Below, piece by piece: positions 1 to 27,611 of a stretch of 64,000 nucleotides of DNA; position 1 is the first letter of the stretch; each line of letters opens with the position of its first letter. The position numbers were made by a program, and so were the translations under genes. Location: assembly GCF_021869535.1 (NCBI RefSeq), contig NW_026262659.1:9424001-9488000 (forward strand), given 5' to 3'. This stretch comes from Mytilus californianus. Lineage: Eukaryota. Below the pieces are notes generated by a model. That model ran no database searches. It was not told the DNA's origin and was given only the letters and a program-made list of their open reading frames with translations.

Positions 1-221
1 ATCAATTTCAGGTTCAGATGGTGGTTTTGGTGACAGACGTTTTTTGTTCTTCGTCGGTAGTTTTACTTTTGGTATTTTAATACGCTTGCAAATACATCCA
101 TATTTCTTGTAGCATAAAATAAACAAACAAATAAACCAAATCAGGAGCGGCAATATGGCAAGTCCAGCTATCAAGTAATATATCCAAGAAATGTCTGTGT
201 CAATTGTCTCATCAGCGCTAC
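1..221 (-). CDS. Gene A exon 8 (transmembrane helix and start of basic cytoplasmic tail; runs off the window)
   Basis: Acceptor gtatttccag; phase 1 continues exon 7; reads (G)SADETIDTDISWIYYLIAGLAILPLLIWFICLFILCYKKYGCICKRIKIPKVKLPTKNKKRLSPKPPSEPEID. A hydrophobic stretch of about 23 aa is followed by a Cys/Lys-rich segment. Additional exons in the 9.3-kb intron cannot be excluded. Confidence 0.75.
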
Positions 222-5334: not shown

Positions 5335-5340
5335 TAATTT

Positions 5341-5358: not shown

Positions 5359-5388
5359 ATTGGTAAGTGCACCGATAATTGAATAAAT

Positions 5389-8413: not shown

Positions 8414-8427
8414 GGAGGCGTGGGTAA
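8414..8427 (+). promoter_or_regulatory. Polypurine tract
   Basis: GGAGGCGTGGGTAA lies immediately before the TG of the 3' LTR. Confidence 0.7.
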
Positions 8428-9311
8428 TGTGATGAATATAGTTCACCTATTTTATTTTACTACTAAGGGTTCAACTTAGTATTACTTTTATCAAGCTGAA
8501 ACATTGTTATACGAACTCGTTTAGTTTGAAAATTGAATGGTTGTCTACTATGGATTTTGTTTTGTTAACATTGCTATGGAAATTTATAACATTTAGAATC
8601 AGGAACGGACAGATTGTGGTTAGCAAACCCGGAAATATTCCGATCGGTAGTTGTAAAAATAAGGGCCGTCATTCAAACGTTTTAGCAATAAGGGTTAGGT
8701 ATTCTATAAACACGCATAGGAATAAGATATTTGGTATCGTCCAAAGTAAATGGTATGGTCCAAAACCTAGTATAAAACCTGATGCGCTGTCAGAATAAGG
8801 GTCGCTTAATGGATATTCCAGACGTCTCAAAGAAGCAAAAAGGTAATTAAATAATTATTTACACTTTATGAAATATTAAATAGATTCTGAATAAGAATTT
8901 ATCTGCGTATCTGAATAAGGTTGTAGGGATATTAAAAGTTGTAAATACGCACCGGGTAACAGGTGCATAGACGACTGTGCGGTAATAGTGCACGGGTAAA
9001 TACGTGCACTGGTTAAACAGTGCACAGGCAGATCAGGTCAAATAGTGCACAGGCGGAACAAGTCAGATAGTACACAGGATAGCGGTGCACAGGATAGTAG
9101 TGCATAGGTAGAATACAGCATAGTTTTGGATAGTGCATAGGTTAGCACTGATTGCTATTGGACACATAAGGTCTGTGCAACACATTGCTGGTTGGTGACA
9201 AAGGCCAAATTAACAAGTATAAGATCGATATCTAAGAGACGGTGTATCTTCCAATATCCAGGGGTAAACTCTGGTACGATACCCATAAGTCACTTCACCG
9301 AGTACGTGACA
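8428..9311 (+). repeat. 3' LTR
   Basis: TGTGATGAATATAG...GAGTACGTGACA; differs from the 5' LTR by scattered substitutions and small indels, including an extra unit of about 14 bp in the gtgcacagg array. Confidence 0.95.
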
Positions 9312-9569
9312 ACTACACGATATGAGTTCGCTCATTTTATGAGGAGCGTACGGTGACCTTTATTTAAATCTACGTAATTTGAATTCTGTTAGATGGTAAT
9401 TTCATTGACATTGGGTAGCATGGCACATCTACTTATTTTATATACAAACACTATCATTTTCCTGATTTACTAAGTTAAACACAATTCAATTAGATTACTA
9501 AAACCAATTGTTTTTACTTGAAATTCTCCTCTTCAAAAACTAAATCATTTTCTTAAGAATTACAATTAC

Positions 9570-9690
9570 CTGAAATATCCCAGGAGACAATTGTCACACC
9601 ATCTGGTCCCGGATTCGTAGCGGTTGTTGCTGTGTCACAAAACTTAGGTGTCTCGGTAGAGTAAACAGTGCCTCCTTCTTTCTTGAAAGC
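9570..9690 (-). CDS. Gene A exon 7
   Basis: Acceptor ctgttacag, donor GTAATT; reads AFKKEGGTVYSTETPKFCDTATTATNPGPDGVTIVSWDIS(G); phase 0 to 1. Confidence 0.85.
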
Positions 9691-10603
9691 CTGTAACAGT
9701 GGTAACGTCATTTTCATTGCGTTACACATATACTTAGACGTTATGAGAACAGGAAATCGTGTTTCTCAGTTAACCATATAAAGTGTTTAATATGCTCTTT
9801 TTGTATTGGCTTCCCAAGCTATAAATATTCAGCCTACTTATTTAGATAATGTTATAGAAAGCAGAGATATCGGTTTTGGATTGTTTTTCTAAATGCTCAC
9901 AATTATTACATATTTTTGTCATACCTGATTAATTCTTCCATTTAACTTTAAACTTGCATCTATTTCTGATGTGATTTACATTTTACATTAGGGCCCTAAT
10001 ATGTATTACGTCATGTATCGTGAAAAATACATAAGAGAGATTAGTTGTACTTGAGGTACATGTATATAATAAAGTGTATATGATATGGTTTTTTTCAATA
10101 TCACACACCGTATCAACCCTCAACCAATATAATCCCTCGAGCAGAGCTCTTGGGATTATATTGGTGTCTCGGGTTGATACAGGTGTGATATTGAAATATT
10201 CTCTATTTATCATACTGTTATAGAAAAAATATATTATGATAAATGAATTTTTTTATTCTTCTGAAAAACGAATGGGCTGCACTTATATTATATCTATAAG
10301 TTTTTGACAACAAATGGGTCGTTACCGCTGATGGTTCGGTCATTGCATGATACAGACGATAAGTAAAAAAATGTCCAATTCTTAAACTTTGTATTTTTTA
10401 TTCTTTTGGTCAAGGGTGATGATTTTTCCCGAATTACGTGTTGTGAATCATATCAAAACTGTTTATTTTGTCATTTAGTATACATGTAAGAGCTACATAA
10501 AATGATGTGATCAGTCTACATATATAGTTACTTATTAATAAATCAAAAATATTATTGTACTTCATTGGTAACTTATTTATGAAATGTGTGTCAGACTACT
10601 TAC

Positions 10604-10719
10604 AAAGCAAGAAAATCTGTAATTATTCGTGTCGTCCACAGTGTTGTCCTGGTTCCAAAGTCCTAGATATGTAAAGCTGTTCACAGTGGTATAAAATAAA
10701 CAACTGTAGCTTCCATTAT
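10604..10719 (-). CDS. Gene A exon 6
   Basis: Acceptor tttaacccag, donor GTAAGT; reads (H)NGSYSCLFYTTVNSFTYLGLWNQDNTVDDTNNYRFSCF; phase 1 to 0. Confidence 0.85.
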
Positions 10720-11069
10720 CTGGGTTAAAGTCAAATTCTTTATTAGCATTATTTTGTGCAATTTAGGTAAGAAGGAACACTGGCATCGTATACTTTGATA
10801 ATTATCACATACGTTGATGAGTTACCAAAAAGGAAAAGTACAAATTTAGGATTTTGTTCATTTTTTGTTTTTGTAATTGGTGCTTATAGGTGTTAAAGCG
10901 GGAGTATTTATATAAATTAGTTTTTTCAATATTTCATGATATAAACCGATCAATGTTTTAGGTATGTTGTTTTTTCACCCATCATCATAATGACCCATCG
11001 CAAATTTTATGTTAATAAAAGTGATGCATATGTTTTAAGTCTAATATGATAACTGAGTTTTATACATAC

Positions 11070-11267
11070 GAGAGGTTTGTTTAGCAGGAGAGGAACATGA
11101 ATCATTGTAGCCAAAACTAACTGTTGTTCTGTTTGCACACACATCTAACGTGTTTCCTGGACAGCTAGTCGTTATGGTGCCATCAGACAGTGTAATGTTA
11201 ACACTCTGGAATATTGCCAATAAATCATCTGGACACCTCGTTGTCAATAATCCATTATCATACGCAT
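11070..11267 (-). CDS. Gene A exon 5
   Basis: Lies within ORF 11041-11427; acceptor ttcgttccag, donor GTATGT; reads (D)AYDNGLLTTRCPDDLLAIFQSVNITLSDGTITTSCPGNTLDVCANRTTVSFGYNDSCSSPAKQTS; phase 1 to 1. Confidence 0.85.
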
Positions 11268-12016
11268 CTGGAACGAAATCATATGTATTACATTTTTGAC
11301 ATCTGTTCTTGAGAAGTCTGTGTGACCCTAGGTATAGCTTGAGAAGTCTGTGTGACCCTATTTCTATACCTAAGTCAACCCTTATTTTATATCGAATCTG
11401 ATTTAACTTTGAGCGATCGAAAGCCACATTAAGGTATATAATCTGATTATGGTAAAACCAAGCCTTTTATTACTCTCATACATGTGTCAACTGAGTTCAC
11501 TTAATAAGTAGGCTTTATGCTGAAACATCTAAGCTGGAAAATAAGTGCAGTGGTCATAGTTAATTTGATATAATACAGAAAATAAAGGAGTGCATTTTAT
11601 ATTTGAAGAGAATCGCTTAACGAATAAAAAAAAAACCAAAGAAACAGAAAACAACACAAAATATATTCAGATTAGAAAATGTAAAACTATTATTTTTGTC
11701 AAAACGTTTATTTAGCCAAAAGAAATGAAAAAAGAAAAGAAAAAATATTAATGTTTGTTTGCTTTTGTGTGCAATTACTAGAAAAGTCAGTGTGGAAAAA
11801 ATTGCTAACATTCTTATTACAAATGAAAGCACACTTCCCAAATAATTGTTCCCTATACTTGTGCTAATATTTATAAAATTATTAGCGCACCATTATTTTA
11901 ATGTGTTTACGCTAATTCAGATTATGGTATGTCCTTGTTTGTATACTATGCCGACTCTAAATATTTATTTATTATTATTGAAAATCTCTCCAATTCAACT
12001 AGTATATAAATTTACC

Positions 12017-12414
12017 TTAAGGATGTTCGCTCCACTTGTTTTTGATTTTTTGCCAGATATTCCGAATCCTCTTGTTTTATCCATGTAGTGCCATTAACAA
12101 ATTTTGCCCGCTAACCCCTACTTTTCTTTTCATAATTTTATTACATCTAGTTTAAAAAGCCATATTTGAAAATCTTATAAAATCCTTGTTACTTTTTCAT
12201 TGTTTTTGAAAGAAAAAAGGTGACAATGTTAAATGTATGAAAAATCTAGAGAGAATCATTTCCCGCCAAATTTTCAATGGCTTATATCTCGAAGACAAGC
12301 ACACGGACCCTTAATTATTTTCTGCTTTTTTAGTTTCTTCATTTATATACTATCAATTAATAACAGTCTTTTAAAAAGCTTGTTATTTTGAAACAGAGGA
12401 GCGAACATCCTTAA
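12017..12414. mobile_element. TTAA-flanked MITE
   Basis: ttaa-GGATGTTCGCTCC ... GGAGCGAACATCC-ttaa gives a 13-bp perfect TIR; a partial second copy with the right end only lies at about 15400-15648. TTAA TSDs are typical of Kolobok/piggyBac-type elements. Confidence 0.85.
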
Positions 12415-12464
12415 AAGATACATTTTAACATGACATACATGTATGTACCTATATAGTTACGTAC

Positions 12465-12590
12465 CTGCTTTAACTAACATAACAAAAGTTTGTTTTCCGT
12501 AAGGATATGCTCTGTTACATACATCTTCAAACGTAACCGTGCCACCGGTAGAATCGCCATATAGATGGTCTTGAGCAAAAACCTCAAAGT
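12465..12590 (-). CDS. Gene A exon 4
   Basis: Acceptor ttcattttag, donor GTACGT; reads (D)FEVFAQDHLYGDSTGGTVTFEDVCNRAYPYGKQTFVMLVKA; phase 1 to 1. Confidence 0.85.
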
Positions 12591-12986
12591 CTAAAATGAA
12601 ATCCTAAAATTCTCATAATATGAGCATCATACAAGTCTGTACATTTGTTTAAAAGCAATCTGTAAATCATTGACACATAGTTGTAAAATTAAGTAGGATA
12701 TGCATGTAATATTGAAAAAAAGCAATTTATTTCTTTTCTTATCTTTATTTCTTGTAGGTCGTTATTGAGGAAAAATAAGAGATGAGGTATGATTGCCGAT
12801 GAGACCAATATTCATCAGACACCAAAGGATGAGGATGTAAACAAATACAGGTCACCGTATGGCATGCAATGGTCAAAACTCAGACCGTATAGTAAGCTAC
12901 ACAAGATCCAGGCATGATAAAATGTGAAACAATTAAAAACAAAAAAAACAACGGCCTTACCTATGCTTATACAATAAACAACAGCA

Positions 12987-13065
12987 CAAAGAACAAAACA
13001 ACACATCAAAAAGACAAAACAACACATCAAAAAGACAAAACAACACATCAAAAAGACAAAAGACA
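12987..13065. repeat. 20-bp minisatellite (aaagacaaaacaacacatca) x3-4
   Basis: Direct tandem copies are visible. Confidence 0.85.
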
Positions 13066-13379
13066 CAAAAAGCCAATCTAGTAAGAGTACTCTCAGTTAC
13101 CATGAAGGTTACATGTAGTTCAAAGTTCATTTTCAACTAATAAATGAACCACGATTTAGTTAAGACGTCTTAAACAGTCTGAGAAAACTATGACTTCGTG
13201 ACTTTTATAATTTATACACTTTAACTATATTTATTCATCAAAAAATTATATACTTTTACTTTATTTATATACTTTAACTACATTTATTCATCAAAAATGT
13301 AGTTTCATTTACTCATGATCACGAAAACATGTAGGGACAGTCTATTTCTAACATTTGTAGTTTCGTAGTTTCTTTTTTT

Positions 13380-14110
13380 GACACTTCCAATTTGACATTT
13401 CTAATTTCTTACTTGAATTTTCTCAATTACAACTTGAAAGTGAGAAATGTCTAATTGGAACTGAGAAGTGTCAAGTTAGAATTGGGAAATGTCAGGTTGG
13501 AATTTAGAAATGCCAACTTGGAACAGAGAAGTGTCAACTTGGAAGTGGAAAGACTTGATGTCAAGTTGAAACTGAGAAATTTCAACTTTGAACTGGAAAG
13601 ACTTAGTGTCAAGTTGAAACTGAGAAATGTCAACTTGGAACTGGAAAGTGTCAAGTTTGAAGTGAAAATGTCAACTAGGAAGTTAGAAATACACAATGCT
13701 TCAACTTGGAAGAATGAAATGTCAACTTGAAACTGAGAAATGTCAAGTTTAAACTGATAAATGACAACTTGGAACTAAGAATTGTCAAGTTGAACTGGAA
13801 AGTGTCAAGTTGAAACTGAGAAATGTCAACTTAAAACTGGAAAGTGTCAAGTTGGAAGTGAAAATGTCTGCTTAGAAGTTAGAAATATCCGTTTGGAAGT
13901 TAGAAATGTCAACTTATAACTGAGAAATGACAATTTTGAAATGAGAAATGTCGAGTTGGAAAAGAGAAATTTCAACTTGGAACAAAGAAGTGTCAAGTTG
14001 AAATTGAGAAATATCCATTTCAGTTTTGTCGCCGAAAAAGCTACAAGATCACAGACGTACCTAACTTTGAACTGAGAAATGTCAAGTTGGAAAGAAAAAT
14101 GTTAAATTGA
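13380..14110. repeat. Degenerate tandem repeat with about 21-bp period (gaaatgtcaagttgaaactga-like)
   Basis: Dozens of variants of gaaa(t/g)tgtcaa(g/c)ttg(g/a)aactga; located in gene A intron 3. Confidence 0.9.
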
Positions 14111-14507
14111 AGAATGAAATGGTTAAATGTCTGATTTACTCTTCCCAGGTACTTTTATTAAGTGCTCGGATGGGAAAATTCAAAATTTCATCGATACTGA
14201 CCAAAACGCATTGTACCTGAAGAAATATTTGCTATTATTTAATTTCTGTATCTGTATGACCGTTAGATTCTTGGTTTACTTGAAGACTTGAATAAAGGAG
14301 TTATGAACTGTATTCTTCAGTATTGAAGCCTTGTCGGCCACGACGAAGAAGAAAGCTTATTGCTGTCTCTTTGTTGGCTAATATGGCTTTTTCTGTTGTT
14401 TTTTTGTATATATATTAAGTCTGGAGGCTACTCTCAAATGTATATCAGGGCCAATACAAAACAGTCAGTTTTAAAATAACACTGTAATCACGACGTTTGT
14501 CACTTAC

Positions 14508-14611
14508 CGGTTCCTAAATAATAATAAAATGTAACGTTGTTTTCCTTAAAAAGCTCTATACACATATAAAACCTCGTGATCGTCCCGAATATATTAGGTT
14601 CAATTACCATT
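14508..14611 (-). CDS. Gene A exon 3
   Basis: Acceptor ttaatttcag, donor GTAAGT; reads MVIEPNIFGTITRFYMCIELFKENNVTFYYYLGT; phase 2 to 1. Confidence 0.85.
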
Positions 14612-15679
14612 CTGAAATTAAAAACAAAATATTTTTCTATATATGCTCATTTGGCTTGGCAAACACCGAATCGTTGACTTTGATAGGTCGATCTCACTTC
14701 ATGTGGATTGTTTCGGTCCAAGATGAAATCACCTGTCTGATAGTCAATAGTTTGGCTTTGATTTATTACTTAGCATTTGCTTTACAAAAACACATAGCAA
14801 ATTTGCAAACTCAGCGGTCTTAAAGTGTGACACCATTGACGTTCCTACAAGAAAGGGTGACCCGCTGTTATTTGCACATAACATATATATTGTATTTTGT
14901 ATACTGTTGTATTTGTCCTTTGGTCATTTTTCGTTTTTTGCCAGTTTTTCCTTGCATTTAAGCTGTGCGTAGTGAGGTTGTCGAATTTCTAACTGGAGGG
15001 GTCATGATTAAGGCCATTGCATGCATAAGCTGTCGGAGTTAGGGTAATTCAGTATATTTCTGAAGATTTGGATATAACAAAGGATTGTCTTTTAAAAGAA
15101 AGTCTATGTCACAGTTTTATAGTATAACTTAGCCATTGAAATGTCAAAAAAACATAATCAACTTTTTGTTAAATTTGAAGCATCATATGAATTCAAGTCT
15201 AGAAAAAAATCTTATGCTAACAGACTAGTCAGAATTTACGTACATTATTGTTTTATTGACAAACAAGAAATTTTCTTTCAATAATTCAAAAGTCTTATGA
15301 TACAATGTAAAATAATGCAGACGAGAAGTAAAAGTCAAATTTTCTTTACATCTGGTCTTTTTGTCTTAGAAAATATTACATAATACCAAATTACAATTAT
15401 ACATAATTAACTGTGAAATCCTTGTTATTTTTTATAGTTTTTGATAGAAAAACAGTGCCAATGTTAATAGTATGAAAAATCTAGAGAGAATCATTTCCCG
15501 CCAAATTTTGAACGGCTTATATCTCAAAAACAAGCACACGGACCCTTCATTTTTCTCTGCTTTTTTAGTTCCGTTATTTATATACTATCAATTTATAACA
15601 GTCTTTTAAAAAGCTTGTTATTTTGAAACAGAGTAGCGAACATCCTTAAATGCAAAACTAGGAAATAAAGTGAACTTAC

Positions 15680-15848
15680 TTCAGAACGTATCGATCGTCT
15701 CTTTTCTCAAGACATTCGAAATCTGATTTAGGTGTAAAAGGTATTGTTAGAGGGTAATCAATGATATGTGTTACATTAGCCCCTATTGTCCCTGTAGAAG
15801 CACTGACATAGGTATCTTCCTCACCAAACGGCATCATACACTGGCCAT
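15680..15848 (-). CDS. Gene A exon 2
   Basis: Acceptor ttttcttcag, donor GTAAGT; reads (D)GQCMMPFGEEDTYVSASTGTIGANVTHIIDYPLTIPFTPKSDFECLEKRDDRYVL(K); phase 1 to 2. Confidence 0.85.
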
Positions 15849-16743
15849 CTGAAGAAAAGAAATGGCATCAATTACGATGTAAAACGTTTCAAATAGTGTT
15901 ACATCTGTAACGAAATTGAATTTCACCGGTAGTATATTGTACCTTAATATGTCTGCATTATATAAGTTGGAAACACCAAAGTCAACCCTTCAATAAGCTT
16001 TCCATGAATTGTCATCTTCCAACCCCAACCCCCCAAATTTGTTTTTTTTTTACAAGGAATCAATTGATAGAAGGGAAATGCAAAAGGAACCTCAAAAACC
16101 CAACATTACGTTTGACGTGTCGACAAGAGAAGTGTTTACGCATCCTCGATGACTCTGTAATTTTAGTTTAATCTTTTGCACTGGTGAGAGGTATAGGTTC
16201 ACACTATGGGGCATCTTATTTCCCATATGTGCTTTTGTTTGTGCTGCCTAACGTTAGTTACCTGTGTTATGCGTGTTATATTCTATTAATATCGTTTGTC
16301 TTTTCTGTCGCGATGTTGTTGTATGTTCTTCTACTTTTGATTTTTATCTGACCCATTTGTAAACAAATGATAATACATATTTACACAATTGAAGAATCAA
16401 GACCAATAAAGGACAATCTAAATTAACACGAACAATGGGTCAGTGAAATGTCGACAAAGGATATATTGAGCCAGCCATGTAAGTCAAGATCAACAAAAGT
16501 CTGTATATAAATACCAATATGTAAAACTAAAGAATAAACAGATATAAAAGTTCATTATGTAGGTCAATAAAATGTAACCGTACATTACTTGTGTCAAAAG
16601 TTGCTGTCTAGTTGACTTATATCTCGTATCTATAAGTATTCTTATTACAACAGTTTAACAGTAAAGTATGTATGATGAGCAGTGTTCATAGACACGCACA
16701 CAAGTATTGGAAGATCATTTACGGTATTATGAAAACCAGTTTA

Positions 16744-16845
16744 GGAATGAGAGACACAATAAAAGAATGAGAGACACAATAAAGGAATGAGAGACACAAT
16801 AAAGGAGTGAGAGACACAATAAAGGAATGAGAGACACAGTAAAGG
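16744..16845. repeat. 20-bp minisatellite (ggaatgagagacacaataaa) x5
   Basis: Direct tandem copies are visible. Confidence 0.9.
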
Positions 16846-17899
16846 AACGTACAAACTACCAACAGACATATTTATGAAAATATACAAACTCGGTTGATTT
16901 CAATGGCCGCTATACTTTATGTTAGTCTATAAGGTAAGTCCACTTGTATAAAATTAAGCACCTCAGTTATTCAACTATATTAACTTCTAATAACCTAGTA
17001 CAGTCCAAATGATGTTTTAAGGTATAAATATGGTGCCTATGACCTCCCGTCCCGTGCTGAGAGGTGTCTATGACCTCCCGTCCCGTGCTGGGAGGTGCCT
17101 ATTTTCTGGGTGAGATGTACAAATACCAACAACGTCGGGTCGGTACGGGAAAATATTTGAAGTCACCGTGTTGGAGTGTTCCCTGCTCTCTACGTGGTAC
17201 ATGTAACGAACTCTTTGTTACCTGTTTGAATGGTGCTCATGTCACTTCATAAAATGCGAAATTGATAAACAAATATGATATTCTGCCTCTAATAAGTCAT
17301 ATGTCAATAAGTAGTTCAAGTATCCCTTAATCCCGGTCCACAACTTTTAAGTGCCAGTCTTTGTAAGAATCAAGCTATTTAGAAAAAAATTAAAACATGG
17401 CAAAAGAAAACCCACCGACCTAACCATCCTATTTTGAAGGTACCCTCATCTTGAGTTAGAAATGGTAGGTCTTTCGTTTCTGCGTGTCTGGTAATTCCAG
17501 AAATATCTAGATAAATTTTGGTAAGAATGATAGCAAATTACGGAGTTATCTCCCTTAAATGTTAATTTCTAGTGCATTTCAACCAAATCATATCTTGAAT
17601 CACCAGAACAGGTAAAGGAAACGAATGTTTTATTCAGGCACCGTTATACATTCTGAATTTAAATAATGGTAAAGCTGGGCGGGTTTTTGTTTGTCATGTT
17701 TTCACCACTGCCTGATTCTTAGGCAGATTAGCGCTTAAAAACACACCTGTTTGATTTGTTCTCTACACGAATCTGCATGAAATATTTGCCACTGGACGTG
17801 AAAGCAGACAATTGATCATTAACTACGTTCTGTATCATGGGGTAGTTTTAGTGATATGACTTTGGTCAATCTTATAAACTTCGGCGTACAAACTATAAA

Positions 17900-18660
17900 A
17901 AATAAGAAGATGTGATATGATAGCCAATGAGACAAGTCTCCACCAGAGACCAAATGACATTGAAATTTAAAACCATAGGTCACCGTATGGCCTTCAACAA
18001 TACGCAAAACCCATCCTGCATAGTAACCTATAAAAGGACTCCAAATGACAAATGAAATACAATTCAAACGAGAAAACCAACGGGATTTATGCACAAAATA
18101 ATGAACGTAAAACAAATATGATATACAGCAATAGACGATAACCACTGAATGAAAGGCTCCAGACGTAGAACAGGCACATACAGAATGTGGCGGGGTTGAA
18201 CATGTTTGTGATGGCGCCAAACCCTCCCCCTAATCTGGGACAGTGGTGTAACAGTACACCATAAGCACAAACTACAATAAAGAGCTGCGCCATGAGCGCA
18301 TGTTACGCCCCTCGCTTTTTCAAAGAATGAAGTTCCATAACTCCTCAATGTCATATCAGAAATTTATAAAAAAAAACTAAAGGGAGCTCACGTCAATAGA
18401 TATAAACAATTCACTATCATGCAAATTTGATAAAGCGGTTTTGAGTTATTGTCCGACATGTTGACGACGGACGGACGGACAACGGTATACCATAATAAGT
18501 TCCGTAAACGGGCGTATACAAATCAGTTGAAAAGGGCTTAACTAATCAGATCGATACAAAGCACATAACAAACCATAACAAAATCAAAAGTAGAGATCTA
18601 AGAGTACACGCAGTTACTGAAAACTAGATCACAGCTAATAACAACTGATAAAAAAGTCAT
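17900..18660 (-). mobile_element. Copy of the most abundant dispersed repeat in the window, with a nested short element at about 18280-18520
   Basis: Family core gatgtggtatgattgccaatgagac...ggtcaccgtacggccttcaacaa...gctataaaagg...caggctcctgacttgggacagg. Further copies in either orientation lie at about 2830-3240, 12780-12960, 25365-25740, 28520-28760, 35395-36640, 37340-37440, 38645-38870, 41260-41590, 42510-42905, 56000-56360, 61540-61710 and 63620-63690. Class is unresolved and the strand label is arbitrary. Confidence 0.85.
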
Positions 18661-18749
18661 GTGTCAGACTCAAAAGTCTTCATTAGAAATCTTCTCTTTT
18701 TAACATTAATAATTTTTCACATAAACCTTTTGAATTTATAAGGAATTAC

Positions 18750-18819
18750 CTGCTTGTTTCGTCCAAATACTTGTAGAGAAGCACAACACAAAAGATATCC
18801 ATGAAAAGTATCTCAACAT
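18750..18819 (-). CDS. Gene A exon 1 (signal peptide) of an uncharacterised Cys-rich type I membrane protein
   Basis: ATG at 18819 gives MLRYFSWISFVLCFSTSIWTKQA plus 1 nt, then donor AG|GTAATT; hydrophobic leader; phase 1 matches exon 2. Confidence 0.8.
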
Positions 18820-19302
18820 TTTCTTTTTTTGTATAACATGCATAAACGCCACTTGGTTTAGGGCAAAATGACAAAAATAATTATTATTCAATATTTTGAA
18901 AATTGCACCTAAATTAAATTGTTCTACATTATTAATTTGATTGAATTTTAAACGTCGCGTGCATTTTATTGATACATTACCTTCCGAACAGAAAATTCAT
19001 TGTCATGAAGGCGATTTAATTACGATATGGGGATATTTCAGCAATTTATAATGTTTTGTTATTAAAGGATAGTCAAATATATTGGACCATGTAAACAATA
19101 AAGTAACAGTGTTCATACCGTTCTAATTACTTATTGGTGTTTGGTTACAAAAGTCTCCTACAAGGCAATACACTGAATGACCGTCTGCTTAATGTGGTGA
19201 TCATTATTAAGTGTGCTTATATTATGCTTTAAAAAAAGTACGAAGTAAAATAGAAATAAAAACGTTTCAATATTTTTCTCATTCTGAGCTATTATATTCA
19301 TT

Positions 19303-19304
19303 CC

Positions 19305-19352
<48 letters not shown>

Positions 19353-19460
19353 AGACCATTATATTCATTCCTATTATTATTCCTATTATTATTATTATAT
19401 TATTTTCATTATTATTATTATAATTATTATTATTTTAATTATTATTATTATTATTATTAT
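19303..19460. repeat. (TTA)n microsatellite, compound
   Basis: Runs of ttattattatta interrupted by a duplicated aaagaccat motif. Confidence 0.95.
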
Positions 19461-20183
19461 TAAAGACCATATGTTCTGCAAGTAATAAAAGAATAAAACT
19501 AATTGGTCCAACGAGAAACGTTCTTCTGTTAAAGTTCTTCTGTTAAAAATGTGCCATATAGATATCGACATAAAATATAAGAACAACAATATACTAACAA
19601 ATTTGTCCATTAATTTTTACAGATCTTTTGTATCTCTAGCTCAGGTTTGCTGTTTCAAGCTTCTATCTGTTTATAATAGTTTTCAAATAAACGAAAATAC
19701 ACTAAAATGAGTTAAAAAAATGTAATTTTAGGACAAACCTCGTTTAAGGAGTCTATGTTTATGTTAATATGCTTGTATTTTTGAAGATCTTGAATTATGA
19801 TCATTTATACAACTGCCGTCACACATTCAGGATTTTTACTGCCGTTATTCCTGATTAAAAATTTGTAAAAAGTCGGATAAAGATCCTGTGATTCGAGGCT
19901 GGAAATTTGTAAATCAAATATTTATTTTTATCCTGCAATCGACCTTTCTACTATACTAATACAGGTGTACAGATAACACGAAGCGATAAACGTATACTAG
20001 ACGTTTATAGTCTCCTAATATCCTGCTTCTGTTGCGAGCGACTGGTTATGTCAAATTACTGTTTACATCACAGTTCAATTTGGGGTCCTCATTGCTGTCC
20101 GCGTTTAAGTCATGCCGATTTCATTCAAAAACAAATTCAACGATTGGGATGGGAAAAAAATGTACAAAATTATTGCAGGATAA

Positions 20184-20333
20184 AGACAATAACTGTTTTG
20201 TGTCTTTAAATATCAGCTGTATTTGTACTCGGCTCCAAACAGGAGTAATAGCTCGCTGAAGTTCGCATTACACCTGTTTCTTAGCCTCGTACAAATACAG
20301 CTGATATTTAAAGACACTAAACAGTTATTGTCT
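20184..20333. mobile_element. Near-perfect 150-bp foldback (hairpin MITE)
   Basis: agacaataactgttttgtgtctttaaatatcagctgtatttgtac pairs with gtacaaatacagctgatatttaaagacactaaacagttattgtct (1 mismatch in about 45 bp); the inner arms also pair. Confidence 0.85.
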
Positions 20334-23300
20334 ATATATTTTTCAGGAACGTCTCGATAATCCCGTTTTCAATCCGATTCAGATCCGATTTGTATCTTTC
20401 GAGTGGTAAATAGATATAGGAAGATGACCGAATTTGTCCCGATAGCGTCCCGATTGTCCAGAATGTGATCACAGGATCTTGATCAGACGTTTGACAAATT
20501 TAAATCGGGAACGGTCCTATTAAGGATGGCAGTTACACTCCTGAATGTGTGTCTGAGGCTTTGTAGTATTTTGTATTTTTCGTATCAGTCTATCTCTTCT
20601 AGCTTTAAACGGCACATTATGTAAATATACAAAACATGGTCAGAAATCATCATTTAAGGGCTATCCCTTCATTAAGAAGTTTTCTGATAATTTTGATACA
20701 AATGAAAAGTAGGTAGATTTTTTCCTCGTCATATCTGTTATGGGTTTCAAGGTATAAGATTATTACTTGATAATGTTCTAATTTAGCTATGACGATAATC
20801 TAGCTTGAAGTTCCGTAATACTTCACAAACTATTATTACATGTATAATGACCTAATCATGTTTTGAATTGGTTAAAATAGGTTCGGTAGATCAGAGGGAG
20901 ATCTCTGACAAACTTTACAACAGATGTAATACAATGTAGCTCATCGTGGTCTATGTTAATAAAAAGGAACAATCATTATATGTATATGCTTGAATAATCT
21001 TGCTTGACCTGCCATTTATCGTTGCGTCGTATGAAAGTCGATCTTTGTTTGTTTAGTATGTCAAATGATAATGTCCTTCATGGGCAATTAACTGTAAATC
21101 ACAATACTGACATTCAATTTTGTCGAACGTTTGATTTTGGCCCCAATTTTGCTTACGCCCAAAGCAACGTTTTGTGAAGGACATAATATATAAATCTAGT
21201 AAACACTTATGGCATTAGATGTGAGCATCTAGATTAACCCTCAGCAAGAACACTCATAGCAACAAGTTCGGAAAGTCAAACCTGTATAAATGCCACACCT
21301 AGTTCGTGTGTTAACCTCTTAAATTACAGGAGGTGGTTGATAAAATAACGACTAAAGAATGCATTAGTTGTACCAATATTATTAATTCGTTCCTATTTTC
21401 AGTGTATTAATTACACCCATTTCAAATGCAATAAATGCACCGATATTAGGAACGAGATATAAACTTCCATTCACAACTAATATTGCGTTTCATGCAGAGG
21501 GTTACCTACATCTAAAATAGTAAGAAATATATATATAAAGTGCCTAGAAAATCAACAATGTTAGAGTAGATCTGATTCTTTACTTCCTCCCCGAGCTGGG
21601 CTGGAACCTGTACTTTTCACTTCTCACTTCTACGACAACACCGCCTAGCATTGCGCAAAGACCTTATCCCCTCCTCTAACTATGGCTGATAAAAATCAGC
21701 TTTCGTTTCAGGATGTGTTACCTTCTCGTAGTTATTAGACAAAGACATCTTATCACAATACACGAAGTATTTTTAAGTGTACAAGAATGATCATCTACTC
21801 ATCTGTTCAGTATAATTACAGGATGCTATTCTATTTTTAGAAGCATACAATCACTATGAATTATATATATATGTATGAAAAAGTCTTCAAATTCATAAAA
21901 AAAATAATTGAAAGTTTTCTCGTTGAATAATCAGTATTAATTCCTCTACGTAGGCAAATATAAATCACCGCGTCCTTAAATCTCTCATTTTTTTTCACTT
22001 TGTGTTTAATCGTCTCTATTTATCTAAGGTATACCTAGAAAATCTACAGATACCATGTTCTATAGTTTTATAATGATAATAATTGTGTTATATAAAGGAA
22101 AAGACTTCCTAAGATAGTGTCAGATCCTCCTTGCCTCGTAAGTTAAATAGAATACTGTGGATTCATTTATTGTGGTTGGTACCTATTTCCAAGAGAAAAG
22201 TCCGTTCTTTTCTTTCGCAGATATTTGATTGTGTAGTTTAAACAAAATTATGTTTACAAATCTACAAGAACTGCGTATTATAATGGATACCACGAAATTC
22301 ACGAAAAATAGTATACCAACAATATTTTGTATTCAAATGTATAAACAAATTTTATTTTATTGAATACTTAAATCCTATACCCATGAAATTAACAAAAAAT
22401 TGTACACCACGAATAAAGATATCCCCTGCCAGATGAGAAGCATACGAAGGGTAACTTGGTTTTATTCCGTTTGTAGCATGTTAAAAAATTCCAATCTAGA
22501 ACAAAAGGGTAAAAGTTAATCATATAACCTTACCATGTTATTATCATAAATATGCCTAATATTTGCCACTGGACGTTAAATAGCTAGTTGTCAATTAATC
22601 AATCTCAGTATGGTGCGAGTTGTTACGTATACTGTAAGATTAAGTAATGAGTTTGCGAGATGTAAAACCACTTCTACAATTGGATGTACCAAAGCAGTCG
22701 TTCAAAGAGGTTCCTAAGCGAACGTCCATTTAATATTCGGGGTGGGGGAGAGTGCAGGATTAATTTTTGCGGATTGACTATTCATTTCATCTGTTGTTAC
22801 GCATGCTTCTTTTTTCAGTTTTAAACACAATTGTTTCCGGCATTTTTGGGTAGCAGAATATTCATGTTTATCCAGTCTAATGCAAGATCATTTACTTTCA
22901 GTTCTTACCAGGCCAGACCATTCATGTTCTAAATCCTCCTGCCCAATCCACCCCCTAGAAAATCAAGTCAAACCTAAGTCCCCTTACAGTTCAGTTAATT
23001 TGTTATACCCAAATGAATTCACGTCTTTGGCAAATTAAAAAGACATTACAGACACATAAATTTAGCTTTGTAAGATTAGTCTTATTCATAAGCAGAGTAG
23101 ATATTTTATCATAGTAACATTCTTGCTTTATTTGGCACTTCAATATTTATAGTTATACTCGTCTGGACACATGTACAATATGTGTCAAAGTAAAGGTTTA
23201 CTTTTATTTTGTCAGCCAATGTCAACTTTTAATTATAAAGTTTTAAATTTACTGATTATTAAAGGTATGCAATCAGATCTAGTGTAGGCTTCCTGCTGAC

Positions 23301-23571
23301 GTCGAATCTATATCAATGGTTTGATTATAGTCAGGAGAAATAATGAACAATAAGAGTGTTTGTTTTCTCGTTTGTGGTCCATAGAACTGCATGATTCGAC
23401 AACAACAAAATATTTGTGTTTTATTATTTCAACTGTTTCAAAAAAGTGACTTCTTGTTCTTATCACCATTTCGACAAATATATAAATCAATAAATGAAAA
23501 AAATATGGTATAGTAATCGTTAAACTTTATATTTGTAAATATTGAATCGTGGAAGGCATACTTTGGACATT

Positions 23572-23626
23572 ATGGTTAAGATTGGATTCTTTTGTATGAT
23601 TGTAATGTGTGTAATTAGTAATACAG
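23572..23626 (+). CDS. Gene B exon 1 (signal peptide); secreted paralog of gene A
   Basis: MVKIGFFCMIVMCVISNT plus 1 nt, donor AG|GTTAGT; phase 1 matches exon 2. Confidence 0.7.
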
Positions 23627-24461
23627 GTTAGTTAATGTTATATATGTATATATTTATATACCCTTACATTTCATATCCCTCAATTTTAATGAACTATGAT
23701 GTTACATAAATTTTCATTAAAAGCCAAATTGATGAATTATAAAAAAAAATGTGTACATTTTTTAAAAACTGATCTTATATCTGTTACTCAGTGACCACAA
23801 TGCGTATATGAATTATTCTCTTGTAGGCAAATATTTGTTTTGAGTGTTCAGTCAACTTGACTCAGATGTTTTCATCTTATTCTGATTTTATAATACTACC
23901 ATTAAAACGAATGCTACTTTGATACAGAGTAAAGAAAAAAGGTTATTTGAATCTCTATTTTAAAAAACTTTCTAAATATATGTGACGGTCAACTGTTGGT
24001 TGACGGGATTGATTGATGAAAAAGGACCAGTACATTCACGACATGTTGACCTTTGAGGATAGTTGTCACATTGGCAATCATATCTTGTTTTCTTACTTTT
24101 ATATCGAAACAGGTGTATGTATATAAGTATTCTTCACTATGGCAGATACACTTCTTGAATTTAATATTTATGTCAAGATGATCGGCTTTACGATACAGTG
24201 GAACTTAGAACTAAATTAAATATAAAACAGACAAATTATTTTAATTAATATAGGATTGATAGTACGCTCTATATATATAATATTTTTTGGTAATATATAT
24301 TTTTATTTTCATATCATTTTCAAGTCTCATCTACAAATAAAGATGTACAAAAAATGACTTTTGCAATAACACATAGATATATGGTAAATCATAATTGTTT
24401 CAATAGAACAGTCAATAATACAATGAAGAATACATCTTTATAATATCATTATATACCCCAG

Positions 24462-24669
24462 ATGCATCCTGCCAATTCAAGGATTCACTTCAGGGTAGAT
24501 GGAATGGAGGTTATGATGCAGACACCAGGAAAAATGTTGTTTTTAGTTTTGATGGAGATACACTGAGGGATTTTACCTTAAACATGCCAACACTGTCACA
24601 GAGTGATTTTACTTGTGTCGAAAGTTACGAGAAAGGAGATACAACGATATATACCTTACAAAATGTGGA
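24462..24669 (+). CDS. Gene B exon 2
   Basis: Acceptor atacccccag-type, donor GTAAGT; reads (D)ASCQFKDSLQGRWNGGYDADTRKNVVFSFDGDTLRDFTLNMPTLSQSDFTCVESYEKGDTTIYTLQNV(E); same phase 1 to 2 and SDF-x-C motif as gene A exon 2. Confidence 0.8.
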
Positions 24670-25165
24670 GTAAGTACTGGGTATTCTACAATATGGAAAG
24701 TCTTTTAAATGACAATGTCTAAGCTGACAATGGTTAGGTTCATAATGTACACTGCTATGTGTGTTTGTATGTGTGTGTGTTTCTATAAAAACTTAAATGA
24801 TTACGACAATCAGTTACTGTAATATAATTAATTTTTTTGTTGTCCATGTAATTTTGTTGACGCGTAGCCAAATTCTTTTCAAAATGATCATGCATGAGAT
24901 TCTTCTTCTAAACTTATTTTTTTCTATGTTAAAATTATCTGTCAATTCGGTTGTTTACGAAAACACTTTTTAATAAACATATATACTTTTTCAATTCATC
25001 TTATGTAAAGTATATACATGTTTAGTAATGTTATAAATCATATCGGCTATACCTGTCATAAGTATTACTATTGACACATGAGATGTATGAGTAACTGAGA
25101 CTGTACTATAGTGGAAATGAGGTTTTTTTTGGATTTTTTATTTGTCGTGCGTATATATATTTTAG

Positions 25166-25248
25166 GACTCCACAACCCATTTTTGGGATCCAAATCGACA
25201 TTTACTTTTGTCTGGCTGTCAAAGGCGAAGAGTATTCTATACTGACAG
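25166..25248 (+). CDS. Gene B exon 3
   Basis: Acceptor atattttag, donor GTACAT; reads TPQPIFGIQIDIYFCLAVKGEEYSILT; aligns to gene A EPNIFGTITRFYMCIEL; phase 2 to 1. Confidence 0.7.
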
Positions 25249-25654
25249 GTACATCTTATATAATTATGATTTTTCTATAAGATTTCCTATGTTGTACAAT
25301 ACATCCCATTCATCGCGGTTATTGTATTTTTCGAACAAGGTAATTTCTGATTCTGTATAAAAATAAATAGATGTGGTATGATTGCCAATGAGACAACTAT
25401 CCATCAAAGTTCAAATGAAGTGGATGTAAGCAATTATAGGCAACAGTACGGCCTTCAACAATGAGAAAAACCCATACAATATAGTCGGCTATACAAAGCC
25501 CCTACATGAAAAATATGAAACATTCAATTGAGAAAACTAACGGCCTAATTTATAACAAAACAATTTACGAAAAACAAATATGGCCGACATGAACTAACGA
25601 CATCCACTGAACTACAGGCTCCTGACTTGGGACAGGCACACAAGGAATGTGGGT

Positions 25655-25687
<33 letters not shown>
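25655..25687. repeat. Poly-G run (33 nt) inside a dispersed-repeat copy
   Basis: Direct; expands the gtggcgggg site found in other copies. Confidence 0.85.
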
Positions 25688-25691
<4 letters not shown>

Positions 25692-26436
25692 ACATGTTTG
25701 TGAGCGATCAACCCCCTAGCTAGTTCAAAGCCAATAACAACTAATAAAACAAATCATATATCTGATTCATTTCTACCAAAGTCTCGTATTTCATAAAATA
25801 AAATTAGACTGATATAAAGGAGATAAAACATTTCATGAGTGTTTTTTTTTTATGGGGGGGGGGGGGGAGGATAATATGGAACTATTAAGATATAAATAGA
25901 AAGAAAATAAAGACAAAACTAACAAATAAAAGCACTTTTGATCACTATGTGCAAGTTTTATGCTTTCTTCATTATTACATGACATGCACAAATGTCCAAA
26001 AAGTACAAATACATAACATACATGTACTTACATCCTAAAATACCTATTTCTGGATTTATAAAGATTTTCATTAATATTTCAGCATCATTGAAATCTCTGC
26101 AAAATGTGTTTTCCTTTGAGTGCTCTTAAAAGTGTCATCAAAATTATATATCATCGGTTTACGCTCTGTTGGTTCCTCATGAAAATAGAGAAAGCATATT
26201 TATGGTAATTTTCATTATTTAAAAAACATATAAATACACACCAACGTCAAACGTTGTTAGATAGAGATCTTTTATATTTTTTTCTAATCATATTTATTTT
26301 AGATAGAACTCAAATGCCCTAATCAGCGTTCCTTACTGCAGAAACTTGCATTAAATAATGCTATGACAGTCAAATTTGTTTACTTTAATAGATTCAATCA
26401 AAATATAACAATATTAACTATTAATTTGAATTAAAG

Positions 26437-26590
26437 GTTTGAATCCTATCCTAAAGGATAAAGTATATGGCGTGAAAGCCGGTACATCTGTACTTACTAA
26501 TGATATTTGTAACCAGAATGGTAATGAAATGAACGAAATGACACAAATAGCGGACCAAATAAGCATGAGAAAGAGTGAAGAAATAACAAG
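26437..26590 (+). CDS. Gene B exon 4
   Basis: Lies within ORF 26439-26654; reads (G)LNPILKDKVYGVKAGTSVLTNDICNQNGNEMNEMTQIADQISMRKSEEIT(R); D-x-x-YG...C-N aligns to gene A DHLYG...VCN. Donor AG|GTACGA at 26590; an alternative donor is possible at 26520. Confidence 0.6.
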
Positions 26591-27568
26591 GTACGAAATG
26601 CAACGTAGCCTATTCCCTCCTTTTTTCAATGTGAAAATGATACTTGTATTTTGAAGTTTTTTTTATTATATTGTGATAGATATATATATAGATAATGCAT
26701 AATTGACGATTTAATGTTATTCAGTTTATTGAGACTCGCATTTTGTTTGCATAATGTTTACTGAGAGAAAATATAATTCACCCACAATGCCTAATTCTAA
26801 TAATTGATTTATTTTAAATTCATCAAACACTAAAACATTTCTTGGTCTACAAATGCACTTTCAAAATAGAAGGTAATCAGTGCCTTACACTATATAAAAA
26901 TTGCTCATCGCTCGCACAACGTGAAGGCGTCCAAGCAGTTAGCTAATTCTATTTACTGATACATTGAGCTTGTAAGACATGCCTACAAATGTTCATGTTC
27001 AATGCCTTTGTAAAAGGACGTGGGACCTTTTTTTATATTCTCTTTTTCTACTTTTGTTAAGATTTTTTCTGGTAGAAAGGGGATAATTCAAATGTATAAC
27101 ATTTATACTCTAGACAAGTATAAACTATATAATGTATAATTTATGAAGCTTGTTCAGATGCATCTGTTCTATCATGTTGTGGAAACGTTAACGAGAACAT
27201 GGTTTGTTTGAAATGTTGACTGTTTCAGATATAATTAGATCAACATTTGCTTCCTTTTTTCTCTGTATATTTAAATGTAAGTTTTAGGTGTACAAATATA
27301 TTTTGCGTTATGATTTGTGATTCAATGTCCGTTTTTCCATGAAAGTCCATTATTCTTATAATTCATTAAACTTCTTTCCGAGTCTCAAACTCATTTTCAT
27401 TGTATCGCTCTATTTACATTGTATTGTACAACAACATTGATTTAAATTGATATATTATGAAAGTTTCATTTAAATTGTGAATGTCTCATCTATTTAATAT
27501 AGAGTACAAACATTTAACTGATAATATCATCATTGTAGTATTACATACAAATATGCATTATTTTGTAG

Positions 27569-27611
27569 ACTGGTCGATTCACTAGAAAGGGAACTTGAAG
27601 ACCGACCTTGA
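27569..27611 (+). CDS. Gene B putative terminal exon 5
   Basis: Acceptor attattttgtag; phase 2 gives (R)LVDSLERELEDRP-stop. The total model is 543 nt (180 aa plus stop). Confidence 0.45.

What the first reader, a model, noticed from the sequence alone, without database searches (positions are those of the whole stretch)
9570..27611. Head-to-head pair: membrane-anchored two-domain protein and an apparently secreted single-domain paralog
Seen in sequence: gene A (ATG 18819, minus) and gene B (ATG 23572, plus) face away from each other about 4.75 kb apart. They share exon phases (1, 1-2, 2-1, 1-), four aligned cysteines (GQC/ASC, SDFEC/SDFTC, YMC/YFC, VCN/ICN) and motifs (IFG, D-x-x-YG), yet are otherwise highly diverged. 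Gene A continues into a second Cys-rich domain, a TM helix and a tail. Gene B seems to stop after domain 1 with a helical acidic end (RLVDSLERELEDRP), and I found no exons matching gene A exons 5-8 downstream of it. Inference: a co-regulated receptor plus soluble decoy or partner driven by a bidirectional promoter, next to an immune cluster. Neither gene is visible as an ORF in the supplied track.
Basis: partly seen in the sequence, partly recalled or inferred. Interest (0 to 1): 0.78.

Follow-up and report, generated by a model that had tools for sequence, protein, structure and literature searches.

The report
Mussel membrane/secreted paralog gene pair
Two neighbouring, back-to-back mussel genes are real, diverged copies of each other, one making a membrane-anchored two-domain protein and the other a small secreted one-domain protein; both are already annotated as uncharacterised, belong to a known but unstudied protein family, and do not share one promoter.

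Summary
The window is Mytilus californianus. Gene B (5 exons, 23572-27611, 180 aa) equals RefSeq LOC127726363. Spliced transcript contigs from three runs show exactly the predicted junctions, with a last exon that runs on into about 470 nt of 3'UTR. No further exons or TM segment appear.

Gene A is a 484-aa type I membrane protein with 9 coding exons.

A's first domain and B are homologous: 46.7 bits against the B-family profile, four aligned Cys, and introns 1 and 3 at identical positions and phases. A's second domain is Pfam DUF7042 (33.2 bits, cut-off 27). B reaches only sub-threshold DUF7043 scores, but its model matches DUF7042/43/44 clusters best (TM 0.53-0.58), a small calycin-like beta-barrel.

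The head-to-head pair is conserved in four Mytilus species, and B is under purifying selection (dN/dS 0.19 in the domain).

A shared bidirectional promoter is not supported. The starts are at least 4.67 kb apart, each gene has its own conserved proximal block, and the two upstream regions are unlike. Co-expression and any receptor/decoy role remain untested.

This is an ordinary lineage-specific paralog pair of unknown function. The scan noted a similar membrane/secreted pair elsewhere in this genome (s1-274896, not checked).

The parts
18750..18843 (-). Gene A exon 1. Encodes the signal peptide. The exon ends in phase 1, inside the Asp codon two residues before the first Cys.
   Evidence: The upstream ATG is conserved in M. 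galloprovincialis and M. edulis.
15680..15848 (-). Gene A exon 2 (aa 32-87): first half of domain 1, with C35 and C77 (SDFEC).
14508..14611 (-). Gene A exon 3 (aa 88-122): IFG motif and C105 (YMC).
12465..12590 (-). Gene A exon 4 (aa 123-164): D-x-x-YG motif and C147 (VCN). End of the domain shared with B.
11070..11267 (-). Gene A exon 5 (aa 165-230): start of domain 2 (Pfam DUF7042), four Cys.
10604..10719 (-). Gene A exon 6 (aa 231-269): DUF7042 continued. The annotated acceptor is at 10719, not the 10737 I first chose.
9570..9690 (-). Gene A exon 7 (aa 270-309): end of DUF7042.
2249..2272 (-). Gene A exon 8: a 24-nt micro-exon (EICLDGIQ, holds C312).
   Evidence: Present in the protein models of three other Mytilus species.
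1..221 (-). Gene A last exon: stalk, TM helix (about aa 331-353, hydropathy 2.85) and the start of the 131-aa cytoplasmic tail. It continues 282 nt beyond the window start.
18844..19267 (-). Gene A promoter-proximal block, 88% conserved with M. galloprovincialis. A TATAAA sits at 19050-19045.
23098..23571 (+). Gene B promoter-proximal block and 5'UTR, 81% conserved with M. galloprovincialis. A TATA box sits at 23479-23486, and the transcript contig starts at 23519.
23572..23626 (+). Gene B exon 1: ATG and signal peptide. Ends in phase 1, in the Asp codon two residues before the first Cys, as in A.
24462..24669 (+). Gene B exon 2: C22 and C70 (SDFTC), C-x-F-x-x-L-Q-G-x-W motif, weak DUF7043 match.
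25166..25248 (+). Gene B exon 3: IFG motif and C103 (YFC).
26437..26590 (+). Gene B exon 4: D-x-x-YG motif, C140 (ICN) and the start of the C-terminal helix. It reads about 14 codons past the position of A's exon 4 donor.
27569..28084 (+). Gene B exon 5: the last 14 codons (acidic helix end), stop TGA at 27609-27611, then about 470 nt of 3'UTR with no further splice in X1 and X2.
   Evidence: contigs end at 27977 in X1 and 28084 in X2. The stop is kept in X12 (TGA to TAA) and in four species.

Best explanation
SHOWN
- A and B are two real, conserved, divergently oriented paralogous genes of Mytilus.
- Gene A encodes a 484-aa type I membrane protein. Its parts are a signal peptide, an N-terminal four-Cys domain of about 135 aa, a DUF7042 domain with eight Cys, a short stalk, one TM helix and a 131-aa cytoplasmic tail. 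The ectodomain carries six N-glycosylation sequons.
- The tail is about 91% identical between species and holds invariant Tyr motifs.
- Gene B encodes a 180-aa protein with a signal peptide, the same four-Cys domain, and a 35-residue acidic C-terminal stretch that is mostly predicted helix. It has no TM segment and no sequons.
- B is transcribed, spliced exactly as predicted, and ends after exon 5.

INFERRED
- Origin: B arose by an old inverted partial duplication of A's first four exons. Introns 1 and 3 are at identical positions and phases, and intron 2 has the same phase within three residues. B then gained its own 3' end.
- Fold: the shared domain is a small disulfide-stapled calycin-like beta-barrel. 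It is a remote relative of the DUF7042/7043/7044 domains that are expanded in molluscs and arthropods.
- Promoters: each gene has its own proximal promoter.
- Mechanism: both proteins act outside the cell by binding a still unknown ligand through the barrel. A couples binding to its conserved tail, for signalling or trafficking. B acts as a free soluble binder.
- At 26-30% identity the two domains have probably diverged in specificity, so B is more likely an independent secreted family member than a dedicated decoy of A.
For: Gene models
- B equals P0011.
- Spliced contigs in X1, X2 and X12 carry all four junctions and an unspliced 3' exon.
- Intronless contigs of 1066-1092 nt encode a near-identical protein (P0036, in the same 90% cluster as the M. 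coruscus ortholog) in three more runs.
- A's window exons translate to P0023 residues 1-391, and the gene spans 19,125 bp.

Homology
- blastp gives 42 bits. The B-family HMM scores A at 46.7 bits. The alignment puts the four Cys in register.
- Domain 1 and domain 2 of A are not detectably alike (hhalign probability 0.1%).

Family
- DUF7042 hits A residues 188-294 at 33.2 bits, above the cut-off of 27. The precomputed DUF7042 hit recurs on the M. californianus product and on the adjacent 485-aa gene in M. galloprovincialis. M. edulis P0032 in A's cluster is named a DUF7042 domain-containing protein by UniRef.
- Sub-threshold DUF7043 hits occur in 6 of 12 domain-1 relatives.
- B's model matches DUF7042 and DUF7042/43/44 clusters best, at TM 0.58 and 0.53. 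The Atlas's own model of B gives the same families at lower TM.
- The language-model neighbours of A are mollusc DUF7042 clusters at 0.93-0.95.

Fold class
- The VIA-align top hits are lipocalin-like, avidin-like and ZinT-like barrels, at Z 5-6.6.

Conservation
- The head-to-head pair occurs in M. californianus, M. galloprovincialis, M. edulis and M. coruscus.
- B orthologs are 177-180 aa and share the same C-terminal end.
- B dN/dS is 0.30 overall and 0.19 in the domain.

Promoters
-.
Against: - No RNA evidence for gene A was obtained here. The only short A-like contigs are from shotgun DNA.
- Both structure models have low confidence: pLDDT 59 for B and 46 for the A ectodomain, with domain 2 at about 30.
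- All matches to solved structures have Z below 8, which the tool warns may reflect only a common arrangement.
- B fails Pfam's DUF7043 threshold, with 13.6-15.1 bits against 27.
- Nothing tests ligand, localisation or any A-B interaction.
- Signal peptides were judged by eye and hydropathy only.
Confidence: 0.7

Rival explanations
1. A is a receptor and B its soluble decoy or co-factor. Both are driven together from one bidirectional promoter as part of an immune gene cluster.
For: - They share an N-terminal domain, and B lacks a TM segment.
- The head-to-head order is kept in four Mytilus species.
- TLR-like and TRIM-like genes lie within 30 kb.
- A's tail is conserved and carries Tyr motifs.
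Against: - The transcription starts are at least 4.67 kb apart.
- There are two separate conserved proximal blocks. The spacer varies from 4.7 kb to 8.2 kb between species.
- The two upstream regions are unlike each other.
- The shared domain is only 26-30% identical.
- Head-to-head order is also what an inverted duplication leaves behind without any selection.
- Co-expression was not tested.
Confidence: 0.12
2. The domains are lipid or small-hydrophobic-ligand binding barrels. A would work like APCDD1, a single-pass cell-surface protein with two beta-barrels that titrates a lipidated ligand, and B would be a soluble carrier.
For: - Calycin-like barrels dominate the structural hits, and mouse APCDD1 is among them at Z 5.1 with 111 residues aligned.
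- APCDD1 has a signal peptide, two apposed barrels, a TM helix and a small cytoplasmic domain, and its second barrel binds lipid (PMC10193966).
- B carries a G-x-W motif near the N-terminus, as lipocalins do (sequence; the comparison is from my own knowledge).
Against: - The APCDD1 hit is tied with dozens of unrelated barrels, and the models are of low confidence.
- There is no sequence match to any solved structure and no APCDD1-type Pfam hit at E up to 1.
- A's domain 2 could not be modelled, so it is not shown to be a barrel.
- A lacks the G-x-W motif.
Confidence: 0.12
3. B is a decaying remnant of a partial duplication, transcribed but without function.
For: - It is a truncated copy.
- B evolves faster than A: 82-83% against 90-92% identity between the same species.
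- The C-terminal stretch has dN/dS 0.6.
Against: - The open frame, four Cys, stop position and length are kept in four species.
- dN/dS is 0.19 in the domain.
- Transcript contigs have k-mer depth 75-166.
- A B-type protein only 34-36% identical to the Mytilus B proteins (P0005, 184 aa) has the same architecture, and it comes from an intronless 629-nt contig.
Confidence: 0.04
4. B has longer isoforms that splice on to TM-coding exons, so the short form is only one product.
For: Only assembled contigs from a few runs were seen, and contigs drop rare isoforms.
Against: - All contigs run unspliced through the stop into the 3'UTR.
- tblastn finds nothing like A exons 5-9 downstream of B.
- The next gene, on the other strand, is a TRIM-like ORF.
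- Four independent annotations give 177-180 aa.
Confidence: 0.02

Closest known systems
Pfam DUF7042 / DUF7043 / DUF7044 proteins (PF23069, PF23070, PF23071), uncharacterised extracellular Cys-containing domains of molluscs and arthropods
   Same: - A's second domain is a bona fide DUF7042.
- A's nearest Atlas clusters are mollusc DUF7042 sets.
- B's model is closest to DUF7042 and DUF7042/43/44 clusters.
- B and its relatives give repeated weak DUF7043 hits.
   Different: - The domain shared by A and B falls below every Pfam threshold.
- B is a stand-alone single domain with a C-terminal helix, whereas the matched clusters are proteins of 262-720 aa, often with several such domains.
- No member of the family has a known function, and no paper in the library mentions these names.
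Calycin superfold (lipocalins, avidins, ZinT/YodA, lipocalin-like Tp0751)
   Same: - The predicted topology is a short N-terminal helical turn, a meander of antiparallel strands and a C-terminal helix.
- The best solved matches are all of this class: Tp0751 at Z 6.6, BT_0869 at 5.2, avidins at 5.0.
- It is a secreted, disulfide-bonded small domain.
   Different: - Z values are below 8, Foldseek E-values are above 0.1, and there is no sequence similarity.
- A ligand cavity has not been shown.
APCDD1 (mouse; PDB 8e0r/8e0p; PMC10193966)
   Same: Overall plan of A: signal peptide, two Cys-rich extracellular domains, one TM helix. An APCDD1 barrel aligns to B's model at Z 5.1.
   Different: - No sequence relation.
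- APCDD1 has a small cytoplasmic domain, whereas A has a conserved 131-aa tail.
- A's second domain is not shown to be a barrel.
Membrane receptor plus soluble paralog pairs (decoy receptors in general)
   Same: One copy is anchored and one is secreted, and they share an extracellular domain.
   Different: The shared domain is only 26-30% identical here. No common ligand, no co-expression and no shared promoter have been shown.

Membership tests
Pfam DUF7042 (PF23069) | Score at or above the curated gathering threshold (27 bits) | tested here: met
   Gene A (P0023) scores 33.2 bits, E 5.6e-8, over residues 188-294. The precomputed hit is also on record for the M. californianus product and for the adjacent 485-aa gene in M. 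galloprovincialis. Gene B has no hit.
Pfam DUF7043 (PF23070) | Score at or above the curated gathering threshold (27 bits) | tested here: not met
   B and its orthologs score 13.6-15.1 bits. P0005 scores 19.9 bits. Six of 12 domain-1 relatives give a hit at E up to 1, the best at 8e-4. A's domain 1 gives none.
DUF7042/43/44 fold | Predicted structure superposes on family models better than on others | tested here: inconclusive
   B's model gives TM 0.58, 0.53 and 0.51 to three DUF704x clusters, ahead of calycin-like clusters at 0.47-0.48. The model's pLDDT is only 59.
Lipocalin / calycin | Eight-stranded antiparallel barrel with a significant match to solved members | tested here: inconclusive
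   Z 5-6.6 to many calycin-like chains. The best Foldseek E-value is 0.14. The tool notes that Z under 8 may be only a common arrangement.
Lipocalin / calycin | Internal ligand cavity and bound ligand | not testable with these tools
   Needs a confident structure or biochemistry.
APCDD1 family | Sequence match to APCDD1 domains | tested here: not met
   No APCDD1-type Pfam hit at E up to 1. The profile of A6 finds no APCDD1 chain in the PDB at E up to 10.
Bidirectional promoter pair | Divergent transcription starts less than about 1 kb apart (the usual definition, from my own knowledge) with one shared promoter region | tested here: not met
   The starts are at least 4.67 kb apart. There are two separate conserved blocks and a variable spacer. 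The upstream regions are unlike each other.
Receptor / soluble decoy pair | Homologous ligand-binding domain, with one copy lacking the anchor | tested here: met
Receptor / soluble decoy pair | Same ligand bound, and expression coupled | not tested

The most novel reading that the evidence does not exclude
The A/B pair, and perhaps the similar membrane/secreted pair noted elsewhere in this genome, is a recurrent bivalve design. In it, a DUF704x barrel receptor with a Tyr-motif tail is partnered by a secreted copy of its sensing domain that tunes or competes for a ligand, possibly a lipid or lipidated one. That would give this large orphan family a first function in mollusc signalling or immunity.
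Probability: 0.1. Interest if true: 0.55.

Novelty: new member of a known kind. Interest (0 to 1): 0.3.

Why it matters
DUF7042/43/44 proteins form sizeable families in molluscs and arthropods, and no function is known for any of them.

This locus adds four things:
- It shows that a divergent stand-alone secreted form exists which Pfam does not recognise.
- It ties that form to the N-terminal domain of a membrane-anchored member.
- It shows that the pair has been kept together in four Mytilus species.
- It gives two small, well-defined proteins that could be expressed to learn what the fold binds.

Otherwise it is an ordinary lineage-specific duplication. Both genes are already in RefSeq as uncharacterised proteins.

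Tried and rejected
- **Pfam on single exons by reference**. Almost blank. Only B exon 2 gave a weak DUF7043 match.
- **Whole-library profile search with exon 2 of A and B**. It gave nine hits. Two were spurious repeat proteins (Ig and cadherin-like). A-type hits were only exon-sized fragments.
- **Getting the full gene A protein past the length window of the search for homologous proteins.** I used a two-row alignment with an unrelated 300-aa first row (P0008:1-300) plus A exon 5. This returned P0023. The cadherin-like hits in that table belong to the filler row and mean nothing.
- **A plain search with P0023**. It found only itself and P0025, so no deep alignment could be built. This is probably why the A ectodomain model failed in domain 2.
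- **Looking for RNA proof of A through P0034**. Rejected, because those runs are shotgun metagenome DNA (PMC11729891).
- **Profile comparison of A's domain 1 with domain 2**. No relation, so A is not an internal repeat of B's domain.
- **Promoter-to-promoter alignment**. No similarity.
- **Literature searches** for the DUF names and for the accession numbers. Nothing found.
- **X21 raw RNA reads**. No reads fell on B. Only about 6% of the run was read, so this says little.

Full report
**What is there**

The window holds no N. It matches Mytilus californianus assembly GCA_021869535.1, contig JAKFGE010000017.1.

Reading the plus strand from 23572 gives a five-exon gene with canonical GT..AG introns and a 180-aa product. 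That product is identical to P0011, RefSeq XP_052089683.1, 'uncharacterized protein LOC127726363'.

Reading the minus strand from 18843 or 18819 gives gene A. I first built seven exons plus a candidate TM exon at the very start of the window. The annotated 484-aa protein P0023 corrected two details. The exon 6 acceptor is at 10719, and there is a 24-nt micro-exon at 2272-2249. With these changes the window exons translate exactly to residues 1-391 of P0023. The last exon continues 282 nt beyond the window start, and the gene spans 19,125 bp.

It therefore misses the micro-exon, the TM helix and the tail.

**Transcript evidence for B**

The runs holding about 13-14% of the words of 23400-28400 fit an mRNA rather than DNA. 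I laid four runs on 23001-29000.

- One contig in each of X1 (920 nt), X2 (1070 nt) and X12 (1050 nt, an RNA-Seq library) carries the joints 23626|24462, 24669|25166, 25248|26437 and 26590|27569. All are GT..AG, with k-mer depth 75-166.
- The last exon runs on unspliced to 27977 (X1) and 28084 (X2). In X12 it shows one extra non-canonical 314-nt skip (27790 to 28105) inside the 3'UTR, best read as a deletion in that divergent sequence.
- X2's contig starts at 23519, just downstream of a TATA box at 23479-23486.
- X12 is a divergent Mytilus sequence. It has a 6-nt in-frame deletion and keeps the stop (TGA to TAA).
- Raw RNA run X21 had no reads on B, but only about 6% of it was read.
- Three further runs hold intronless contigs of 1066-1092 nt encoding P0036, a near-identical protein in the same 90% cluster as the M. 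coruscus ortholog.
- tblastn finds nothing like A exons 5-9 downstream of B.

**Paralogy**

- A against B by blastp gives 42 bits and 30% identity over 93 residues.
- An HMM built from four B-type proteins scores A at 46.7 bits over the same region.
- In the alignment the four cysteines and the IFG, D-x-x-YG and (I/V)CN motifs are in register.
- Intron phases are 1, 2, 1 in both genes.
- Introns 1 and 3 fall in the same aligned codon. Intron 2 has the same phase and lies within three residues in an ambiguous stretch of the alignment.
- B's exon 4 reads about 14 codons past A's exon 4 donor position, and B's exon 5 has no counterpart in A.
- A's domain 2 is not detectably related to domain 1 (hhalign probability 0.1%).

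**Anatomy of the proteins**

A has these parts:
- a signal peptide;
- domain 1, about residues 31-165, with four Cys;
- domain 2, residues 166-317, with eight Cys;
- a TM helix at about residues 331-353;
- a 131-aa cytoplasmic tail;
- six N-x-S/T sequons in the ectodomain.

B has a signal peptide, the four-Cys domain, no sequon and an acidic C-terminal stretch (10 D/E against 5 K/R in the last 35 residues) that is mostly predicted helix (residues 157-177).

**Family**

- Pfam places DUF7042 on A residues 188-294 at 33.2 bits, above the cut-off of 27.
- A's domain 1 has no Pfam hit.
- B and its relatives give only sub-threshold DUF7043 hits: 13.6-19.9 bits, in 6 of 12 relatives.
- AlphaFold2 models are weak: B has pLDDT 59, with a core at about 70-76. 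The A ectodomain has 45.8, with only domain 1 above 65.
- B's model is nearest to mollusc DUF7042 (TM 0.58), arthropod DUF7042/43/44 (0.53) and mollusc ShKT+DUF704x (0.51) clusters, followed by calycin-like barrels.
- The Atlas's own model of B lists DUF7042 (0.49), DUF7042/43/44 (0.48) and DUF7043 (0.45) among its neighbours.
- A's model matches a mollusc DUF7042 cluster (TM 0.53) and nothing else.
- A's language-model neighbours are mollusc DUF7042 clusters at 0.93-0.95.
- Against solved structures Foldseek finds nothing significant.
- VIA-align gives Z 5-6.6 to lipocalin-like Tp0751, lipocalin-like Bacteroides proteins, avidins, ZinT and mouse APCDD1. This fits a small calycin-like barrel, but the scores are below the level at which the tool advises trust.
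- No solved relative is found by sequence.
- APCDD1 has two extracellular barrels plus a TM helix, and one barrel binds lipid (PMC10193966). That makes it an architectural analogue of A, not a demonstrated relative.

**Conservation**

The head-to-head pair is present in four species:
- M. galloprovincialis: LOC143084960 and LOC143084961, 8.2 kb apart;
- M. edulis;
- M. coruscus: 4.68 kb apart;
- M. californianus: 4.73 kb apart.

Other points:
- A orthologs are 90-92% identical, with domain 1 at 87-88%, domain 2 at 93-97% and the tail at about 91%.
- B orthologs are 82-83% identical between the same species, and all end at the same place.
- B's dN/dS against M. galloprovincialis is 0.30 overall, 0.19 in the domain and 0.6 in the C-terminal stretch.
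- P0005 (184 aa) is only 34-36% identical to the Mytilus B proteins but has the same plan. It comes from an intronless 629-nt contig of an ENA assembly. The short secreted form is therefore not a one-off.

**Promoter question**

B's transcript start (at or before 23519) and A's ATG (18843) are at least 4.67 kb apart. Against M. galloprovincialis, only 18713-19267 (88%) and 23098-23671 (81%) are well conserved. The middle has short patches and about 5.6 kb of extra DNA in that species. The two 600-nt upstream regions do not resemble each other (score 30 against shuffles of 26.4 +/- 2.7).

This is two promoters, not one bidirectional promoter. Shared distal enhancers cannot be excluded.

Co-expression was not tested. 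The only short A-like contigs I found come from shotgun metagenome DNA.

**Interpretation**

The best reading is an old inverted partial duplication within the mollusc-expanded DUF704x family. It left a membrane-anchored two-domain protein and a secreted single-barrel paralog, both under constraint and each with its own promoter.

Binding of an unknown extracellular ligand by the barrel is inferred from fold class and location only. A dedicated receptor/decoy relation is possible but unsupported, and the low identity of the shared domain argues against a shared ligand.

Both genes are already annotated as uncharacterised, and no paper in the library mentions them or the DUF names. The finding is real but ordinary. 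The scan's note s1-274896 reports a similar membrane/secreted head-to-head pair on another piece of this genome. I could not check whether it is the same family.

Noticed in passing
window ~4400-9360 (LTRs 4503-4802 and 8466-8765): An LTR element sits inside intron 7 of gene A. Its two LTRs are 99% alike, and the LTR starts are only 3963 nt apart, so the internal part is short. The exon 7 to last-exon distance is 9.3 kb here, about 7 kb in M. coruscus and about 3.1 kb in M. edulis. This suggests a recent insertion.
   Followed up: partly
window 12193-12415 and 15428-15650: A 223-nt direct repeat, 91% alike, lies just downstream of A exons 4 and 2, inside the introns. It is probably a short interspersed element.
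   Followed up: no
window 25201-25800 and 28401-28800: Summed contig depth is very high (10^3-10^4) in all RNA runs, with many loose ends. These are abundant, transcribed repeats inside B intron 3 and downstream of B, not part of B's mRNA.
   Followed up: no
window 30981-32957 (-): A single-exon ORF of 658 aa, annotated as 621 aa, with B-box zinc fingers, a coiled-coil stretch and weak NHL / beta-propeller matches. It is a TRIM-like protein without an obvious RING.
   Followed up: partly
window 43123-45243 (-) and 52186-54330 (-): Two intronless paralogous ORFs of 706 and 714 aa. By eye they read as leucine-rich repeats, a TM helix and a TIR-like C-terminus. I did not scan them against Pfam.
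   Followed up: no
window 54672-55589 (-): A 305-aa ORF that looks like a reverse-transcriptase fragment of a retroelement, directly downstream of the second TLR-like ORF.
   Followed up: no
L004 (M. edulis GCA_905397895.1) 7498-7675 and 19191-19698: In this M. edulis assembly the A ortholog has stop codons in exon 2 and a frame change in the last exon. Its annotation is accordingly only a 234-aa fragment (P0026). Another M. edulis assembly has an intact 484-aa protein (P0031). This is either an assembly error or a null allele.
   Followed up: partly
L010 34994-36164 (M. coruscus); L004 25153-28622 (M. edulis): A further A-like DUF7042 gene lies in tandem downstream of A, with about 40% identity in exon 2. 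No such copy is seen within 10 kb downstream of A in M. californianus.
   Followed up: partly
P0025 (M. coruscus, 437 aa): The annotated M. coruscus A ortholog skips exon 6 (the residues from NGSYSC to RFSCF), although tblastn finds that exon in the locus at L010 17715-17813. This is a model difference or an alternative isoform that removes two of the eight domain-2 cysteines.
   Followed up: no
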